The position numbers and the translations under genes were made by a program. This document shows positions 4,391 through 29,022 of a stretch of DNA of 64,000 nucleotides, piece after piece. The DNA lies in the IMG/VR virus record IMGVR_UViG_3300028840_002431, positions 124,001 through 188,000 of that record; one strand, written 5' to 3'. The notes beneath the pieces were generated by a model. It saw only the letters and a program-made list of their open reading frames with translations, searched no databases and was not told the DNA's origin. Every line of letters starts with the position of its first letter. Positions within the stretch are counted from its first letter, which is position 1.

Positions 4391-5236
4391 ATGAGGAGGA
4401 ATGTTATGGGCGAGTACCGCTGGAAACAAAAAGGCTCCGAGGTCGTAAAGCTTCAAGACGCTCTCATAGCCAAAGGGTATTCTTTACCCAAGTACGGGGC
4501 CGACGGAGACCTGGGTAAAGAGACGTGGAGTAAGGTTGAAGCCTACGCCAAAGTAGACCAGTTCCCGACGAACAAACCGTTACCGTTAGAGGTGACGGAC
4601 GAGATACTGGGCATCAAGAGTGAGCCGCCCGGAGATTTCGACTACCCCGAAGGCTATGTCAGAGTGGACGGGGACCCCAACGATAACCACGGGACACGCT
4701 CGTGGACTCAAATCAACACCATCATGATCCACCAGACGGGCGTCTGGATGACCGACACCCCAGAGCGTTTCAAGACATTGAATGCTCACGTTGGCATCCT
4801 GAAGAACCACGAAACACCTATCGTTCAGACGCAGCCCCTGACAGCCTACTGCTACCACGGGAATGAAGCCAACAAGTTCACCATCGGCATCGAGATCAAT
4901 GGAGCCTTCCCCGGACTCATAAAGCGCTACGACTCAGAAAAACATTCAGCCGAAGGTCCGTCAGCCGGTCAGATCGAATCGACCCGTAGGTGCCTCCAAT
5001 GGCTCATGGACGAAATCGAGGCCCATGGCGGTAAGATTCAACACATCATACCGCACCGGGTTTCCAACGACACTCGAAGAGGAGATCCCGGAGAGGTTGC
5101 CTGGAAGGCTATCGGTGTTTGGGCGCAACAGGAGTTGGGTCTAACTGATATGGGGCCGGGATGGACGATTGGAGATGGGACTCCGATCCCGTACGAATGG
5201 GACGGCCGACCCGTCTACAAGAAGTACAAGTACTAG
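4391..5236 (+). CDS. Endolysin: peptidoglycan-binding domain + N-acetylmuramoyl-L-alanine amidase (Amidase_2-like)
   Basis: KGSEVVKLQDAL...GADGDLGKET (PG_binding_1); IHQT, HGNEANKFTIGIEING, PHR, DPG amidase motifs. Confidence 0.85.
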   Translation: MRRNVMGEYRWKQKGSEVVKLQDALIAKGYSLPKYGADGDLGKETWSKVEAYAKVDQFPTNKPLPLEVTDEILGIKSEPPGDFDYPEGYVRVDGDPNDNHGTRSWTQINTIMIHQTGVWMTDTPERFKTLNAHVGILKNHETPIVQTQPLTAYCYHGNEANKFTIGIEINGAFPGLIKRYDSEKHSAEGPSAGQIESTRRCLQWLMDEIEAHGGKIQHIIPHRVSNDTRRGDPGEVAWKAIGVWAQQELGLTDMGPGWTIGDGTPIPYEWDGRPVYKKYKY

Positions 5237-10932: not shown

Positions 10933-11739
10933 ATGAGGTCCCACCGTCTCAAAGGCGCATCCTTCCAACCTTCGAGTTGCAACGACAAGCTGAGCAAGGT
11001 ATCGCGCAAGCTCCAATACAACGGCCGCTACGCGAGTCACCCAAAGCCTCCTTACGTCTGCTCCACCTACGTATCCATCGAGGCCACGTGTCCCAAGACG
11101 TGCCGGTTCAAGGACACCGGGTGTTATCCTCAGGTCGGGAACGCGGCTTCGTCGGTCCGGTCCCTGGACGAAGACGCCATGTACGAAGGGCTGACTGGCC
11201 CCGACGTGGCCAAGGCAGAGGCCGAGTTAATCAATCAGGCGTGGCCCAAGGGAGTCCCACAGGACGGCGCTCAAGGAGGCCGGGACCTACGGCTCCACGT
11301 GTCAGGAGAGACGGCGGACACCGCGTCGGCCTGGGCGTTGGGTATAGCCGCCAGCCGTTGGAAAGGTCGCGGGGGAGGTGATGTTTGGACCTACACACAC
11401 AACTGGCGGACCATAGAACCATACGACTTCGGCCCCATATCGGCGTTGGCGTCGGTCGAGACCCAAGAAGAGGCGGAAGAAGCCATCGAGCGTGGGTATA
11501 CCCCAGCCATGGTTGTAACAAAGTTCCCGGCAGACAAGGCTTTTCTGATCCCCGGCACGGGTATGAAGGTCGTCCCGTGTCCAGCCCAGATCCGGACATC
11601 CAAATGTATAACGTGCCGTCTGTGCTTCAAGCCGATGCCGAAGGGTAAGCTTATCGGCTTCCAGTTGCACGGGTTCGGGGCAAACAGGATGGTGAAGAAG
11701 CTTCCCACACTGGGCCAGATGACGATGCCTTGGGCTTGA
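10933..11739 (+). CDS. Cys-rich phage protein (Gp88/DUF7227-like, possibly Fe-S binding)
   Basis: TCPxxCxxxxxGCY, RLHVSG, WTYTH, ASVET, CPAQ, CxxCxLC motifs. Confidence 0.6.
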   Translation: MRSHRLKGASFQPSSCNDKLSKVSRKLQYNGRYASHPKPPYVCSTYVSIEATCPKTCRFKDTGCYPQVGNAASSVRSLDEDAMYEGLTGPDVAKAEAELINQAWPKGVPQDGAQGGRDLRLHVSGETADTASAWALGIAASRWKGRGGGDVWTYTHNWRTIEPYDFGPISALASVETQEEAEEAIERGYTPAMVVTKFPADKAFLIPGTGMKVVPCPAQIRTSKCITCRLCFKPMPKGKLIGFQLHGFGANRMVKKLPTLGQMTMPWA

Positions 11740-15787: not shown

Positions 15788-15840
15788 TCGCGTACGCGAT
15801 CGGTGTACGAAATCCAGAAGCCTTGCGCACCGGAGGGAGA

Positions 15841-16356
15841 ATGCCTATTCCAAAGCCAAAGGACACGATCCTCACAGAAGAACAATGGGAGTCGGTTCGT
15901 CGTTTGTCTACTTTAGAACAGGAGATTGCCAGGGACTACTACCGTAACGATTTAACTCAAGCCCAGATAGGGCTACGGCATGGCATGACGCAAGCGGCAG
16001 TATCGACCCGACTGTCAAAAATTAACGAACGTTTGGAGTGGGTACAGCACCTGCCGCCCATACCCACAAGCGACCTCACAGAATTGCTAACGCCCGAATT
16101 CAATTCTTCCACACCGATACTGACAACCTTGTACGAAACGACGTGCCAAAGTGAAACGGCTGTCAGGATGGGTTGCTCGCAGGGGAAAGTCCGGCACCAA
16201 CTCCACAAGGCGGTGGACAAACTCGAAACCCTCGTTGAATCAGGCCGCACTGACCTCGAAGAGGTGCTACGAGGGTTGAGAACGATCCGAGATAGGGACG
16301 GAACACTCCACACCTTCGACCACCCGTCGAGGCGAGTTGATGAAATAAACCCTTAG
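15841..16356 (+). CDS. Sigma-70 region-4-like tandem HTH protein
   Basis: LSTLEQEI...LTQAQIGLRHGMTQAAVSTRL and a second HTH QSETAVRMGCSQGKVRHQL. Confidence 0.7.
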   Translation: MPIPKPKDTILTEEQWESVRRLSTLEQEIARDYYRNDLTQAQIGLRHGMTQAAVSTRLSKINERLEWVQHLPPIPTSDLTELLTPEFNSSTPILTTLYETTCQSETAVRMGCSQGKVRHQLHKAVDKLETLVESGRTDLEEVLRGLRTIRDRDGTLHTFDHPSRRVDEINP

Positions 16357-16404: not shown

Positions 16405-17733
16405 TTGGGTTCATTTAACGCTACCTGTGCCATATCCGGACTGCCTATCGGGCCAGGAGACCCCGTCCGGTACCTGCTACTGTCCGGAAATTACAGCGAA
16501 AGAGGGCCGGTCTGTATGCCCTTCGATAAGTGGGAACCAAGGACCTTCCCGATCCGGGCCGAGTATAACGACTACGGTTCGATCGAGAACCCCGAAGAGG
16601 GTATCGGCCCTCAGTTATGGCTCGACGGCCTGAAACGGGACCTCGTCCCACAGGGGTGGGGTGATAACAGTTGCCATGACGTGCCGACCGACCCCGACAT
16701 GACGTGGGGCCAATTGTTAGAAGCCCTGTGGGAGGGCCGGGTATTAATCGACCCCAAGAAAGCCAGGGGCATGTCACTCTTGGACCGGGTCCTGGAAGCA
16801 AGCGACAAGATTCTGCTCGAAAAGGCCCGCAAGAAACGGTTGGACCCGGAGGTGCCGGAAGGCGTGCCGACACTGGAACGGATTAAGAACGTCCTGTCAG
16901 GGCACCCGGCGTTCAACGGCTGGGGTAATGACGGCTTCATGGTGGACGAGACCGAACGAGCCGTGGTCCGGGTACGCTGGCACGGCCAGGATCGTATCGA
17001 CCACCTGGAGACGGCCAGAGACCTACTGAACGAAGGCTACGCGGCCCTGTTAGTCTCAGGGAGCGGCAACTATTCCGACGAGGCAGAGGTGTTGGTCTTT
17101 GCCAAACCGGGCGTACGTTGTGGCCGTGGGATGCACCACGAGGCTTATTACGCACCCCGGCCGGTCGCGCCCATGATGATCCGCGAGGACGTGTGGCAAG
17201 CCCTCCTCAAGCTGGACACCGTGGAACGAAGTCTTTGGGGCAGCGAGGAGATGGGTTCCAAAACAGACCGGAGTCTGGGCGCTTACAAGAAAGCGGTCCG
17301 TGATCTGTACGGTCGAAGGCTGAAACAACAAGAGGTCCTCGAAGCTACCGCAAAGAGCGACCTTGAGGTCGCCATCGAGGCCGTGAAAACCAGCGGTGTG
17401 TACCCGAAACCTAATAGCCTGACCCACGCCCTGGAAGATCCGCTGACCCTGAGTTTCGGGTGGGGAGGCCACTGGGAACTGTTAGTTGACAAGGCGCTCC
17501 CCGCCGAAGAGATAAGCGACACCCTCGACGCCGTAGCCGAGTCACTCTACGTGTGTACGGCTCTGATGTGGGTCCGATACCTGTGGCAGCCGTCGCATAC
17601 GGTAGGGCCTCAGTTTGGTTCCTTCAACATGCACGAGGCTTACCACAAGGCCATGGCCCAGATAGCCTACGAACGGCACGAAGAAGACCGAAAGCAGTAC
17701 GAGGACGAGATAGACGAGGAGGACGCGGAGTAA
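16405..17733 (+). CDS. Phage hypothetical protein (MGSFNxTCxxSGL type)
   Basis: 442-aa ORF; GAGGAGG RBS; YNDYG motif. Confidence 0.75.
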   Translation: MGSFNATCAISGLPIGPGDPVRYLLLSGNYSERGPVCMPFDKWEPRTFPIRAEYNDYGSIENPEEGIGPQLWLDGLKRDLVPQGWGDNSCHDVPTDPDMTWGQLLEALWEGRVLIDPKKARGMSLLDRVLEASDKILLEKARKKRLDPEVPEGVPTLERIKNVLSGHPAFNGWGNDGFMVDETERAVVRVRWHGQDRIDHLETARDLLNEGYAALLVSGSGNYSDEAEVLVFAKPGVRCGRGMHHEAYYAPRPVAPMMIREDVWQALLKLDTVERSLWGSEEMGSKTDRSLGAYKKAVRDLYGRRLKQQEVLEATAKSDLEVAIEAVKTSGVYPKPNSLTHALEDPLTLSFGWGGHWELLVDKALPAEEISDTLDAVAESLYVCTALMWVRYLWQPSHTVGPQFGSFNMHEAYHKAMAQIAYERHEEDRKQYEDEIDEEDAE

Positions 17734-25977: not shown

Positions 25978-26334
25978 ATGGCCATGGAAGATGGCATAAA
26001 TCTGGACCTGACCGGCATGTCCGAAGACGACCTGTTGGTCCTCAAGGACGAGTTGGACGGTGAGATAACCGCCATCCGGATTCAGATTGAGGGAGCCAAG
26101 GTCAAAGCCGCAGACGGAGAATACTCAGACCGGACATGGTGGTTCAAGGCCAATGCCGCCTTGAAGATAAAGGGTCGCCAGAGCCAGCAAATCCAAAACA
26201 CACTGGGCCGCCTGAGACGTGAGAAAAACAGGGAGTTAGAAAAATGCTTCGTCGATGTGGCCAGGACACAACTTTCCCAGGCACAGTTCGAGGAGATAAT
26301 GGATGAGGCCAAGGCAACCCAGGAGGCCAAATGA
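25978..26334 (+). CDS. Coiled-coil hypothetical protein
   Basis: ORF in operon with ATGA overlap to the next gene. Confidence 0.6.
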   Translation: MAMEDGINLDLTGMSEDDLLVLKDELDGEITAIRIQIEGAKVKAADGEYSDRTWWFKANAALKIKGRQSQQIQNTLGRLRREKNRELEKCFVDVARTQLSQAQFEEIMDEAKATQEAK

Positions 26335-26567
26335 GAGTTAGTATTATTGTATCTGGCCAGAAGGTGGAACTTCCCGTCAGTAAGGACCAAAAGATAGGAC
26401 GCCTTTGCAAAGAGGCCCTCGCCAAGGTCGGGTTCCCAACAGATGAGGATTGGGAGATGCGAGACTCCGACGGAAAGCTCCTGGAGCATGATGTACGGAT
26501 CTACGCCTACCAAATAAAGGGTGGGCAAACACTGTACCTGAGTCCCAAGGCAGGAGTGGGAGCCTGA
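26331..26567 (+). CDS. Ubiquitin-like beta-grasp protein (DUF2604-like)
   Basis: IIVSGQ...EAL...EDWEMRDSDGKLL...TLYLSPKAGVGA resembles DUF2604 proteins (WELRD...LFLxLKAGVGG). Confidence 0.7.
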   Translation: MRVSIIVSGQKVELPVSKDQKIGRLCKEALAKVGFPTDEDWEMRDSDGKLLEHDVRIYAYQIKGGQTLYLSPKAGVGA

Positions 26568-27456
26568 TGACGGCCATCCATAAGGTCAGGTGCAACCCCA
26601 TAGCGGATTGGAGACTCCCAGCCGGGAAGAACCCCCTACTGGAAGGCGTCTTTGCGCCCGTCAAGACCTACTGCGGCATCATGAAAGAACCCGTGCCAGG
26701 ACACGGAGGGCCACCCAAACCAAAGGATAGCGGAATGTCGTCTCACGACAGGGATGTCACCTGTAAGAGGTGCAAACAGAGGATGAAAAGGATAAGGGCC
26801 GCTGAGCGTATCCTTCAACCCCAGGACGAGGCCGTGAAGGCATGGCAAGAGGTGGCCAAAAGGAACCCACAGCGGGTCAACCGGATACTCACCAAATGGT
26901 CGGAGTACGCCCATTGGGGCCTTGGCCGGGATATTCATATTGCACAGGCTGATGGGGAAATAATGCTGGCCGCCGTCAAGCTCCTGGGGAGCATGACGGA
27001 AAACCAACCACACGAAAGGCAATCATGAAAACCAGAGCACTGTCAGTCAACATTTCCAACGAACTACTGGCTAAACTCGACGCCTTAGTTAGTAGGTACC
27101 CATTTGCCAAAAGACACGCTGTCCACCTGATAGCTCTGCGTATTGGGCTTGATGAGTTGACGAGAAACCCAGAGCGGGTCAGAGAAGAAGAGCCGGAAGC
27201 AGCGGAGGCTGAAGCTACTGGCAGGGGGTGGCTTGATATGGCTTTGGAGGCTTGCGAGTATCTAGAGGATTTGCGGGCACTCGATCATTTCGTTTTTCAC
27301 CAGAGGTATAACGGGGCCTCTAACACGTGCCTTCTCTGCCAATACGGTGTTGACTGGGAGCACAAGGAGTCAGGGCACCATCCGGATTGTGTTTACCCAA
27401 AGGTTTGGGGTGAGGTAAAAGACCGCAAACTAGAGGACTGGGCCAGAAAGCAGTAG
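26567..27456 (+). other. Two hypothetical ORFs (26567-27028 Zn-binding; 27025-27456 with RHH-like N-terminus)
   Basis: Overlapping stops/starts; CG...CxxC; SVNISNELLAKLD. Confidence 0.55.
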
Positions 27457-28254: not shown

Positions 28255-29022
28255 ATGACCACAGCTAATGAGAAGATAGCCGAGAGGCTTGCGCAGTACA
28301 CACAACTGACTGAGAACATCACCAAGCTCGAAGGTGCTATAGAGCAGGTCAAGGCCATGCGTAGCGATGTGGCCAAGGCGCTACGTGAGGAGAATGGAAA
28401 AGATCAACTCTACGACCTGGGTGACGGCATACCCCTATTCGTCTCTGCCACCAAGATAGGGACCTTCTTCTTGGCCCCGAAGAGGCGGTCCGGTACCCGT
28501 AAGAAGAAGAAAAAGGTCAAGAAGGAGATCAAGGACGGTAAGGTTGTCGAGGTAGGGGAGGAGGGTCCGGCCCCTACCAAGAAGCCTATCGAGATCGAGG
28601 CCACCCTGACCGGCCGGGGTGCTGTAGCGGCCCCTGAACCGGAGGCGTCCCATACGGCCGATACCGTCGTACCCGCCCCCTCCGAACCGCCCCCTGAACC
28701 AGAGCCGGTCGTTACCCCGCCTCCTGAGCCTGAGGGAACCCCTATCGAGATCGATCGCTACGAAGAGGAGGAGCCTCTCCCCAACGTTGACGATTTGCCT
28801 CCGCCCGTGAACGCCGAAGAGTTGGCCGCGATGGAGCCTGACGTGGTCGAGCCGTCTCCCATGGACAAACTGATTGCCGAAGCTGGCGCTGATTTGCCCC
28901 CGGATGACCCGGAGCCTGTCGAAGACGTTGCGGAGCCGTCAGCGGCCTCTGAGGACGAGGAATTGGAGGAATTCGACCCTGTCATGGCCGCCCTGGCTGA
29001 GATCGAAGAAGAGGGTAAATAA
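28255..29022 (+). CDS. Acidic Pro/Glu-rich protein with Lys-rich segment
   Basis: 255-aa ORF; GGGAGG RBS. Confidence 0.75.
   Translation: MTTANEKIAERLAQYTQLTENITKLEGAIEQVKAMRSDVAKALREENGKDQLYDLGDGIPLFVSATKIGTFFLAPKRRSGTRKKKKKVKKEIKDGKVVEVGEEGPAPTKKPIEIEATLTGRGAVAAPEPEASHTADTVVPAPSEPPPEPEPVVTPPPEPEGTPIEIDRYEEEEPLPNVDDLPPPVNAEELAAMEPDVVEPSPMDKLIAEAGADLPPDDPEPVEDVAEPSAASEDEELEEFDPVMAALAEIEEEGK

What the first reader, a model, noticed from the sequence alone, without database searches (positions are those of the whole stretch)
26331..26567. Orphan phage ubiquitin-like protein ending GVGA: possible decoy of bacterial Ubl conjugation systems
The sequence resembles DUF2604-type beta-grasp proteins, which in bacteria typically end in AGVGG and sit near E1/E2/peptidase genes. 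Bacterial Ubl conjugation is an established anti-phage mechanism (Bil systems). No E1 or E2 is present in this window and the last residue is Ala. Inference: a non-conjugatable or processing-dependent mimic that jams host E1/E2/DUB enzymes.
Basis: partly seen in the sequence, partly recalled or inferred. Interest (0 to 1): 0.62.

Follow-up and report, generated by a model that had tools for sequence, protein, structure and literature searches.

The report
Orphan BilA-like ubiquitin-like protein in jumbo phage
A 416-kb phage carries a stand-alone copy of the small ubiquitin-like tag that bacteria use to disable phage tails. Its attachment end is altered (Gly to Ala), and it has no conjugating enzymes nearby, so it may be a viral mimic that interferes with that bacterial defence, though this is untested.

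Summary
The ORF at 26331..26567(+) is real. It encodes 78 aa, has an AGGAGG ribosome-binding site and is translationally coupled to both neighbours. It matches Pfam DUF2604 (E 2e-11, above the curated cut-off). Its best solved relative is BilA, the Ubl of bacterial type II Bil defence operons. AlphaFold gives a confident beta-grasp fold (pLDDT 92.8).

The window is part of a 416,539-bp IMG/VR viral contig. No Bil-type E1, E2 or JAB gene lies in the 64-kb window or beside eight other phage-borne homologues. All 15 bacterial loci examined carry BilB-BilC-BilD directly downstream.

The gene belongs to a phage-borne lineage of orphan BilA-like Ubls. In that lineage the tail P-x-x-G-x-G is 91-97% conserved. 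The final residue is the reactive Gly in 118/118 bacterial homologues but Gly in only 53% of phage members, nearly all the rest having Ala.

"Non-conjugatable" is not established. E. aridi BilA natively ends Gly-Ala and is trimmed by BilC. CBASS E1-E2 enzymes accept a C-terminal Ala, and a Gly-to-Ala mutant accumulates as thioester.

Best reading (about 0.4): a mimic of host BilA that competes for, or stalls on, host Bil enzymes. The other 352 kb of the genome was only pattern-scanned.

The parts
26331..26567 (+). Gene for a 78-aa single-domain ubiquitin-like protein of the BilA/DUF2604 family (stop codon included)
   Evidence: ORF and sequence. Pfam PF10790 E 2.2e-11. PDB BilA 8tyx E 3e-5. 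AF2 pLDDT 92.8. Foldseek 8tyx_A TMq 0.87.
26544..26564 (+). Codons for the C-terminal tail P72-K-A-G75-V-G77-A78. In the phage lineage P72, G75 and G77 are 97%, 97% and 91% conserved. A78 sits in the column of the reactive Gly.
   Evidence: Per-column conservation of 34 phage-type against 118 bacterial-type sequences. The last profile position aligns to Gly97 of 8tyx_A. Mean pLDDT of the last 8 residues is 69, so the tail is flexible.
26321..26326 (+). Shine-Dalgarno AGGAGG, 4 nt upstream of the ATG
   Evidence: Read directly from the sequence.
25978..26334 (+). Upstream gene (118 aa, helical, no family). Its TGA stop overlaps the Ubl ATG (ATGA).
   Evidence: Gene call in L001-L004. Pfam nothing significant. 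No homologue next to other phage Ubls.
26567..27028 (+). Downstream gene (153 aa, four Cys, no family). Its ATG overlaps the Ubl stop (TGATG).
   Evidence: Pfam gives only sub-threshold noise, including LupA at E 0.22. PDB nothing. Single-sequence AF2 pLDDT 52.9, unusable.
27025..27456 (+). Next gene in the same overlapping operon (143 aa). By eye it has an RHH-like N-terminus and a Cys/His cluster.
   Evidence: No Pfam hit. No PDB hit. The RHH reading is from inspection only.

Best explanation
Shown: the gene encodes a genuine single-domain ubiquitin-like protein of the BilA/DUF2604 family, carried by a 416-kb IMG/VR viral contig of jumbo-phage size. It belongs to a phage-borne lineage of BilA-like Ubls that stand alone in early or replication-type gene strings, with no E1, E2 or JAB gene nearby. 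In bacteria the same family always sits directly upstream of BilB (E2), BilC (JAB deubiquitinase) and BilD (E1). Within the phage lineage the flexible tail P-x-x-G-x-G and the beta3 surface motif W-E-x-R..(D)G are the most conserved positions. The last residue, the Gly that Bil E1 adenylates, is invariant in bacteria but is Ala in about half of the phage members, including this one. Inferred: the protein acts as a mimic of the host's BilA. It docks on host Bil enzymes (E1 first, possibly E2 and the DUB) through the retained surface and tail. Because of the terminal Ala it is a poor, blocked or slowly discharged substrate. It thereby competes with BilA and lowers Ubl conjugation onto phage virion proteins. 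Two concrete versions are possible. In the first, Ala is in register with the reactive Gly, so the protein is charged but discharges slowly, as seen for the Gly-to-Ala mutant of CBASS cGAS. In the second, Gly77 is reactive and Ala78 is a one-residue cap that occludes the ATP site until a DUB removes it, as in E. aridi BilA.
For: Family and fold. Viral origin: exact match to IMGVR_UViG_3300028840_002431, 416,539 bp; endolysin and phage-family hits in the window. Orphan status: BilB/C/D HMMs found nothing among 1,160 + 464 ORFs of the window and phage loci, best E 0.12. No ThiF by Pfam in nearly every window ORF of 200 aa or more. No E1/E2/JAB Pfam family in the gene tables of nine phage contexts. 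Bacterial contrast: in the 15 bacterial loci BilB is directly downstream of the DUF2604 gene in 15, BilC in 13 and BilD in 14 (the misses lie at contig ends or at long-ORF overlaps). Lineage: the phage-type clade has 35 rows, 17 of them GxGA, and the GA label is clustered (5 changes against 15.6 in shuffles). A second IMG/VR jumbo phage of 349,793 bp carries a GVGA member. Selection on the tail: P72 0.97, G75 0.97, G77 0.91, W41 0.91, R44 0.94 and G48 0.97 in a clade with 36% mean column identity. The last column is G in 118/118 bacterial but 0.53 in phage sequences. Mechanistic precedents: BilA Ala98 blocks ATP binding and prevents conjugation unless BilC removes it. A cGAS Gly-to-Ala mutant shows less conjugation but more E1 thioester. 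Docking test against a bacterial BilD: weak support, score 0.58 against best control 0.02. That mark was reached by 51 of 78 solved complexes and 2 of 108 mismatched pairs. At 0.60 or below, however, it was reached by only 5 of those 78 solved complexes and by all 4 mismatches that passed (of 180). The runs agree in at least 88% of contacts and the partner pLDDT is at least 79. A like complex (8tyz) is solved, so the pass may reflect likeness only. Neighbourhood hints: the anti-restriction gene Lar is 5 kb from the L005 homologue. NAD synthase and NAPRTase lie 3.3 kb from the L013 homologue. An orphan N6/N4 methyltransferase is 1.7 kb from the L036 homologue.
Against: There is no functional data. 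The host is unknown, so it is not known whether the host has a Bil system. About half of the phage lineage keeps a canonical GG end, so Ala cannot be the whole mechanism. Terminal Ala is compatible with conjugation or processing in two bacterial systems, so the protein could be a substrate rather than a blocker. 352 kb of the genome were not read. The IMG/VR pattern scans for Bil E1, E2 and JAB are insensitive. The loop after helix 1 (SGNxGQ, invariant in bacterial BilA) is lost in this protein, so part of the bacterial interaction surface may be gone. The complex prediction is only weak support.
Confidence: 0.4

Rival explanations
1. Hijacked modifier. The phage Ubl is a working substrate. 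Either the host BilC removes Ala78, or the Ala-ended protein is charged directly. Host Bil-type E1/E2 then conjugate it to host or phage proteins to the phage's benefit, for example by occupying the lysines BilA would hit with a smaller, harmless tag, or by modifying host factors.
For: E. aridi BilA natively ends Gly-Ala and is matured by BilC. Three solved BilA homologues have exactly one residue after the aligned Gly. C-terminal Ala is naturally conjugated in CBASS. Half of the phage lineage ends in canonical GG. The tail is strongly conserved.
Against: Ungapped and profile alignments put A78 on the reactive-Gly column, not after it. Maturation at G77 would therefore give a tail one residue shorter than every bacterial member. 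No target is known. No bacterial BilA among 118 has Ala in that column.
Confidence: 0.2
2. Non-conjugating beta-grasp adaptor. The protein has been recruited for a job unrelated to Bil, for example as a protein-protein adaptor in the replication or early module, comparable to YukD in type VII secretion. The tail is kept for binding a phage partner.
For: The gene always lies in replication, recombination or early-type gene strings (DnaB, PolA-UDG, DUF3987, RecT, YqaJ). Some homologues are fused to 25-250-aa extensions of unknown function. There is a weak YukD similarity (E 6e-5, below cut-off).
Against: No neighbour is conserved between phage loci, and no fusion partner matches a neighbour. A disordered G-x-G tail is not expected to stay 91-97% conserved without a tail-reading enzyme. 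The YukD score is below Pfam's threshold, and bacterial BilA proteins give the same cross-hit.
Confidence: 0.18
3. Cognate phage pathway. The 416-kb genome encodes its own E1/E2/peptidase elsewhere, and the Ubl is used in a normal phage-run conjugation system.
For: Only 64 kb of 416 kb could be read. Jumbo phages carry many unexpected enzymes. Genes of one pathway are not always clustered in phages.
Against: There is no E1/E2/JAB in the window or within 10 kb or less of any of nine phage-borne homologues, including contigs of 7-26 kb. IMG/VR scans with Bil E1, JAB and E2 alignments returned no confirmed hit on any viral contig. In bacteria the genes are contiguous in all loci examined.
Confidence: 0.12
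4. Neutral passenger. A host bilA gene was captured by chance and is decaying, and the terminal Ala is one sign of that decay.
For: The SGNxGQ loop and the terminal Gly, both invariant in bacteria, are lost.
Against: The gene is intact, has a strong RBS and is translationally coupled. It folds confidently. It belongs to a diverse lineage (30-55% identity) present in unrelated phages, with selective conservation of the tail and beta3 motif. GxGA recurs in several subclades.
Confidence: 0.05

Closest known systems
BilA, the Ubl of type II BilABCD anti-phage operons (Ensifer aridi BilA, PDB 8tyx/8tyz; Pfam DUF2604)
   Same: Same Pfam family and same beta-grasp fold. It is the best sequence and structure match. 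It shares the V-S-G-Q, W-E-x-R, D-G-x-L-L and L-x-L-S-P-K-A-G-x-G motifs. Native E. aridi BilA also ends in Ala.
   Different: It is encoded by a phage, not in a bacterial defence island. No BilB, BilC or BilD is adjacent (against 53). Ala occupies the reactive-Gly column instead of following it. The SGNxGQ loop is replaced and is 2 residues shorter.
Type I BilA (Collimonas Bil system, di-Ubl, ISG15-like)
   Same: A conjugatable Ubl used against phages, with a conserved Gly-containing tail.
   Different: Type I BilA has two fused Ubl domains, and a C-terminal Gly 'fully conserved among all homologs'. The phage protein has one domain and ends in Ala.
C-terminal Gly/Ala of cGAS/CD-NTase in type II CBASS (Cap2 E1-E2, Cap3 JAB)
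   Same: This shows that bacterial E1-like enzymes accept a C-terminal Ala. It also shows that Gly-to-Ala lowers transfer to targets while raising the E1 thioester intermediate (PMC10097602). That is the behaviour a stalling mimic would need.
   Different: The conjugated protein is a nucleotidyltransferase, not a beta-grasp Ubl. It is a host component of the defence, not a phage protein.
Ubiquitin G76A / G76V
   Same: Substitution of the terminal Gly in a beta-grasp modifier. G76A fusions are removed only inefficiently by DUBs (PMC9703124). From my own memory, not checked here, G76A can still be activated and conjugated slowly.
   Different: These are engineered eukaryotic mutants. The phage variant is natural and recurrent.
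Virus-encoded ubiquitin homologues (e.g. baculovirus v-ubi) and the lambda-type tail assembly Ubl/JAB pair (own knowledge, not tested here)
   Same: These are precedents for viruses carrying ubiquitin-fold proteins related to host or viral conjugation and processing.
   Different: They belong to different families. v-ubi keeps GG and uses the host eukaryotic cascade. The lambda I/K pair is a tail-assembly module with its own JAB. No sequence relation to them was found here, and there was no PHROG hit.

Membership tests
DUF2604 / BilA ubiquitin-like protein family (Pfam PF10790) | Profile HMM score above Pfam's gathering threshold over the whole domain | tested here: met
   44.4 bits against a cut-off of 25, E 2.2e-11, residues 2-77 on profile positions 7-84 of 85.
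DUF2604 / BilA ubiquitin-like protein family (Pfam PF10790) | Beta-grasp (ubiquitin) fold | tested here: met
   AF2 pLDDT 92.8, pTM 0.79. Foldseek 8tyx_A TMq 0.87, rmsd 2.2, then ubiquitin and NEDD8.
DUF2604 / BilA ubiquitin-like protein family (Pfam PF10790) | Flexible C-terminal tail with P-x-A-G-x-G motif | tested here: met
   P72, A74, G75 and G77 are present. These columns are at least 0.99 conserved in 118 bacterial and 0.65-0.97 in 34 phage-type sequences.
DUF2604 / BilA ubiquitin-like protein family (Pfam PF10790) | Universally conserved reactive Gly at the end of the tail (the conjugation site) | tested here: not met
   The aligned column is Ala78. Bacterial sequences have G in 118/118. 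The last profile position aligns to Gly97 of 8tyx_A. The literature states that this Gly is fully conserved. Gly77 remains one position earlier.
BilABCD (type II Bil) defence operon | E2 gene (BilB, PF14455-like) adjacent to the Ubl gene | tested here: not met
   BilB HMM best E 0.12-0.66 in the window and phage loci. It is present in all bacterial loci.
BilABCD (type II Bil) defence operon | JAB/JAMM deubiquitinase gene (BilC) adjacent | tested here: not met
   BilC HMM best E 0.16. IMG/VR scan with a BilC alignment gave no confirmed hit.
BilABCD (type II Bil) defence operon | E1 gene (BilD, ThiF family) adjacent | tested here: not met
   BilD HMM best E 0.37-0.63. No ThiF by Pfam in nearly every window ORF of 200 aa or more. 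IMG/VR scan gave no confirmed hit.
BilABCD (type II Bil) defence operon | Located in a bacterial chromosome, typically in a defence island | tested here: not met
   The window is part of a 416,539-bp IMG/VR viral contig. A bacterial example, L020, sits beside an R-M system.
Phage anti-defence protein (decoy or mimic of a host immune component) | Small accessory gene in a phage genome, homologous to a component of a host defence system but lacking the rest of the system | tested here: met
   The same pattern holds in eight other phage contexts.
Phage anti-defence protein (decoy or mimic of a host immune component) | Physically engages the host enzyme it mimics a substrate of | tested here: inconclusive
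   Complex prediction with a Chloroflexia BilD gave weak support: 0.58 against best control 0.02. That mark was reached by 51/78 solved complexes and 2/108 mismatched pairs. At 0.60 or below it was reached by only 5 of the 78 and by all 4 passing mismatches (of 180). A like complex is solved, so the pass may show likeness only.
Phage anti-defence protein (decoy or mimic of a host immune component) | Relieves the defence when expressed | not testable with these tools
   This needs plaque and conjugation assays.
YukD (type VII secretion Ubl, PF08817) | Profile score above the gathering threshold | tested here: not met
   24.1 bits against a cut-off of 27. Bacterial BilA proteins give the same cross-hit.

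The most novel reading that the evidence does not exclude
A lineage of phage-encoded BilA mimics would be the first counter-defence against ubiquitin-like (Bil) immunity. Members ending in Ala would act as mechanism-based traps. They would be adenylated and loaded onto the host E1/E2 cysteines but discharged slowly, as for the Gly-to-Ala mutant of CBASS cGAS. Alternatively they would cap the E1 ATP site, as does Ala98 of E. aridi BilA. Either way the host conjugation cascade is tied up during infection. Fused members (Ubl followed by 25-250 aa) could be DUB-released effectors.
Probability: 0.3. Interest if true: 0.8.

Novelty: new variant of a known kind. Interest (0 to 1): 0.62.

Why it matters
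Bil systems were shown in 2023-2024 to conjugate a Ubl onto phage tail proteins. In the paper library searched here, no phage countermeasure to them and no phage-encoded BilA homologue was found. The family is also absent from PHROGs and from 50,697 GenBank phage records.

A recurrent viral copy of the tag, stripped of its enzymes and altered at the attachment residue, would parallel how eukaryotic viruses tamper with ubiquitin and ISG15 pathways. It would also supply a natural probe for the E1/E2/DUB chemistry of bacterial ubiquitination. Even if the decoy idea fails, an enzyme-less Ubl lineage with a strongly conserved tail in phages needs an explanation.

Tried and rejected
- PHROGs gave only noise (E 0.28) and PADLOC gave nothing for the Ubl.
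- megablast of 12 kb and tblastn of the Ubl against GenBank phages found no match.
- The search for related loci with the broad alignment A1 failed because no conserved stretch was available.
- With A2, both the IMG/VR scan and the single metagenome scan returned only the same phage. Scan A8 found nothing. The contexts of relatives therefore had to come from exact-protein look-ups.
- P0003, the closest representative, lies on a 576-bp contig with no context.
- The second profile search (A6) mostly re-found bacterial-type proteins because of the word index.
- IMG/VR scans for Bil E1, JAB and E2 returned no confirmed hit. They rest on a few exact peptide patterns, so a blank is weak evidence.
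- The downstream 153-aa protein gave a sub-threshold LupA (ubiquitin-specific protease) hit: E 0.22, 11.6 bits against a cut-off of 25. It was followed up with a PDB search, which found nothing, and a single-sequence AF2 model of pLDDT 52.9, which is unusable. It is treated as noise.
- No 'Rosetta stone' was found. The C- or N-terminal extensions of fused homologues match no neighbour of any phage Ubl and no Pfam domain.
- No neighbour is conserved across phage loci.
- There is no second DUF2604 copy in the window.
- I considered programmed read-through into the downstream ORF and rejected it. Two consecutive in-frame TGA codons follow the Ala codon, and the downstream ORF is in another frame.
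- The host could not be inferred. The window has no tRNAs and no informative host-like genes were seen.

Full report

The ORF 26331..26567 on the + strand encodes a 78-aa protein ending LYLSPKAGVGA.
- The Ala codon is followed by two in-frame TGA stops.
- An AGGAGG ribosome-binding site lies 4 nt before the ATG.
- The start overlaps the upstream gene's stop (ATGA), and the stop overlaps the downstream start (TGATG). The gene therefore sits in a translationally coupled + strand operon.
- The longer antisense ORFs over this stretch (26082..26528 and 26377..26664) are not called as genes in any public copy.
- The same gene is found base-for-base on 12 contigs from several samples.

**2. What family is it?**

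- Pfam DUF2604 (PF10790) matches at E 2.2e-11, 44.4 bits against a gathering score of 25, across the whole protein. YukD and ubiquitin hits are below threshold.
- The best solved relative by sequence is Ubl(BilA) of the Ensifer aridi type II Bil system: 8tyx/8tyz at E 3e-5 for the single sequence, and 3.7e-19 for a profile of the phage lineage.
- An AlphaFold2 model built on 48 homologues has pLDDT 92.8 and the beta-beta-alpha-beta-beta order of a beta-grasp. Only the last eight residues are flexible.
- Foldseek ranks 8tyx_A first (TMq 0.87), followed by ubiquitin and NEDD8.

**3. Where does it sit?**

A 50-mer from the gene matches two IMG/VR viral genomes exactly. One is 416,539 bp, and the gene lies at about 150.3 kb of it.

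The 64-kb window is densely packed with small ORFs, almost all without family. The exceptions:
- an endolysin with PG_binding_1 and Amidase_2 domains;
- a DUF7227 protein;
- a protein with two sigma-70 region-4 domains.

GenBank phages hold nothing similar, and PHROGs and PADLOC have no model for the Ubl.

**4. Is it an orphan?**

I fetched a canonical bacterial operon (L020). It has DUF2604, then a PF14455-type E2, a 162-aa protein, and a ThiF E1, all beside an R-M system. I then fetched 15 bacterial loci from Actinomycetota, Chloroflexota, Dormibacterota and Terriglobales. BilB is directly downstream of the Ubl gene in all 15, BilC in 13 and BilD in 14 (the misses lie at contig ends or at long-ORF overlaps).

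HMMs built from these proteins found every bacterial copy. They found nothing better than E 0.12 among 1,624 six-frame ORFs (40 aa or more) of the window and the phage loci. Pfam found no ThiF in nearly every window ORF of 200 aa or more; the few left out overlap longer scanned ORFs and were covered by the BilD HMM. IMG/VR scans with E1, JAB and E2 alignments gave no confirmed hit on any viral contig. This last test is weak because it relies on a few exact peptide patterns.

352 kb of the genome remain unread.

**5. It is a lineage, not a one-off.**

An exhaustive phmmer search of 1.84 billion representatives gave 60 hits. Many of the closest end exactly like this protein:

| Ending | Members |
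|---|---|
| GVGA | P0003, P0017, P0020, P0032, P0033, P0036, P0041, P0043 |
| GTGA | P0002 |
| GIGA | P0019 |
| GAGA | P0035 |

Others carry GxGA followed by a long extension: P0007 (207 aa), P0015 (330 aa) and P0009.

Contexts could be read for nine phage-type homologues, seven GA-type (the window included) and two GG-type. All look like phage early or replication modules, and none has an E1, E2 or JAB Pfam family in its gene table.

| Locus or protein | Context |
|---|---|
| L005 | DnaB with intein; Lar |
| L013/L037 | 349,793-bp IMG/VR genome; NAD synthase and NAPRTase; DUF3850 |
| P0064 contig | PDDEXK, RecT, HNH, DnaB |
| L015 | YqaJ, AAA_23, RNase_T, DUF5131 |
| P0043 contig | string of small ORFs; HNH |
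| L036 | DUF1064, TnpB, N6/N4 methyltransferase |
| L016 and L018 (GG-ended) | PolA-UDG, DUF3987, ThyX |

Apart from the Ubl, no gene is shared between unrelated loci.

A maximum-likelihood tree places these sequences in one clade of 35 rows (support 85/80; resolution is poor with 89 columns). The clade holds 17 GxGA and 18 GG-type members. The GA label needs about 5 changes, against 15.6 for shuffled labels.

**6. The tail.**

Of the DUF2604 proteins of 160 aa or less fetched here, 142 end in GxGG, 65 in GxGG plus a short extension, and 16 have GxGA. None of the 118 bacterial-type sequences compared column by column has anything but Gly in the last column.

In the phage clade mean column identity is only 36%. 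The most conserved positions are still:
- G9 (1.00), G48 (0.97), P72 (0.97), G75 (0.97);
- R44 (0.94), W41 (0.91), G77 (0.91).

These are the beta3 surface motif and the flexible tail. The last column is G in 0.53 of phage-clade sequences and almost always A in the rest.

A disordered tail kept this tightly, in proteins with no cognate enzyme nearby, argues that an enzyme still reads it. The enzymes known to read this family's tail are the Bil E1, E2 and JAB. In contrast, the SGNxGQ loop, invariant in bacterial BilA, is lost in this protein.

**7. What does the terminal Ala mean?**

The profile alignment puts the last column on Gly97 of E. aridi BilA, the residue that is conjugated. Ungapped, AGVGA lines up with bacterial AGxGG. 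The simplest reading is therefore a Gly-to-Ala substitution at the reactive position.

Two published facts stop this from meaning "non-conjugatable".
- Native E. aridi BilA ends Gly97-Ala98. Ala98 sterically blocks ATP in the E1 site and prevents conjugation until the JAB enzyme BilC removes it (10.1101/2023.09.26.559546). If Gly77 were used, this phage protein would be such a capped pro-form with a tail one residue shorter.
[quoted passage not shown] Gly-to-Ala reduces transfer to targets but increases the Cap2 thioester intermediate (PMC10097602).

Hör et al. state that the terminal Gly is fully conserved among BilA homologues, so the phage lineage is a true departure.

**8. Mechanism.**

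My best reading (about 0.4) is a mimic of host BilA. It would occupy the Bil E1, E2 or DUB and, because of the Ala, be blocked or discharge slowly, so that it competes with BilA.

A docking prediction against a Chloroflexia BilD gave weak support: score 0.58 against best control 0.02.
- That mark was reached by 51 of 78 solved complexes and 2 of 108 mismatched pairs.
- At 0.60 or below it was reached by only 5 of those 78 and by all 4 mismatches that passed (of 180).
- The runs agree in at least 88% of contacts, and the partner pLDDT is at least 79.
- Because the BilD-BilA complex is solved, the pass may show likeness only.

Neighbouring anti-restriction and NAD-salvage genes near three homologues are mild guilt-by-association.

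The rivals are:
- a hijacked but working modifier (0.2);
- an unrelated beta-grasp adaptor (0.18);
- a cognate phage pathway elsewhere in the genome (0.12);
- a decaying passenger gene (0.05).

**9. Novelty.**

In the paper library searched I found no report of phage-encoded BilA homologues or of any anti-Bil factor. I rate the finding a new variant of a known kind: a known Ubl family in a new setting, with a lineage-specific change at the conjugation residue. It would rise to a new class of counter-defence if the mimic function were shown.

Noticed in passing
window 15823-16356 (+): A 177-aa protein with two sigma-70 region-4 domains (Pfam E 4.4e-11 and 3.5e-07). It lies directly upstream of a 442-aa protein (16405-17733) whose N-terminus matches phrog_5960. 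It could be a phage sigma-like or anti-sigma transcription factor.
   Followed up: no
window 4391-5236 (+): Endolysin with an N-terminal PG_binding_1 domain and an Amidase_2 domain (Pfam E 3.7e-10; endolysin PHROGs).
   Followed up: no
window 10933-11739 (+): A DUF7227 / phrog_2554 protein (E 1e-16). It is one of the few ORFs in the window with any family.
   Followed up: no
window 1-64000: 64 kb of a 416-kb viral contig with no tRNA and no ORF longer than 442 aa. Almost every ORF scanned has no Pfam family. The strand bias switches near 30 kb (AT skew changes sign).
   Followed up: partly
window 27025-27456 (+) and 28255-29022 (+): By eye, the 143-aa protein has a ribbon-helix-helix-like N-terminus and a C-terminal Cys/His cluster. 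The 255-aa protein is an acidic Pro/Glu-rich low-complexity protein. Neither has a Pfam hit.
   Followed up: partly
L005 6552-9419 and 4696-4890: Next to the closest homologue with readable context (P0002, 55% identical) lie a DnaB helicase interrupted by an intein with a LAGLIDADG domain, and a Lar restriction-alleviation gene.
   Followed up: no
L013/L037 4697-6702: A second IMG/VR jumbo phage (349,793 bp, from one of the samples that also holds the window phage) carries NAD synthase and NAPRTase genes 3.3 kb upstream of its own GVGA-ended Ubl. From my own knowledge, NAD reconstitution is a known counter-defence theme.
   Followed up: no
L036 2036-3142: A TnpB (OrfB_IS605 / Cas12f-like) gene lies immediately downstream of the GVGA-ended Ubl homologue P0041, with an N6/N4 DNA methyltransferase 1.7 kb further on.
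   Followed up: no
proteins P0007/P0064, P0015, P0024, P0025, P0034, P0009, P0052, P0049: In these phage-type Ubls the GxG[GA] tail is followed by 25-250 further residues with no Pfam domain (coiled-coil-like in P0015). This resembles ubiquitin-fusion precursors, and the junction could be a DUB cleavage site. P0014, P0040 and P0048 instead carry N-terminal extensions.
   Followed up: partly
bacterial-type proteins P0175, P0100, P0101, P0179, P0184: Some operon-type BilA proteins end GG plus A, NA, DA or QA. These short propeptides resemble E. aridi Ala98, so a trailing Ala is common in bacteria but always follows the GG.
   Followed up: partly
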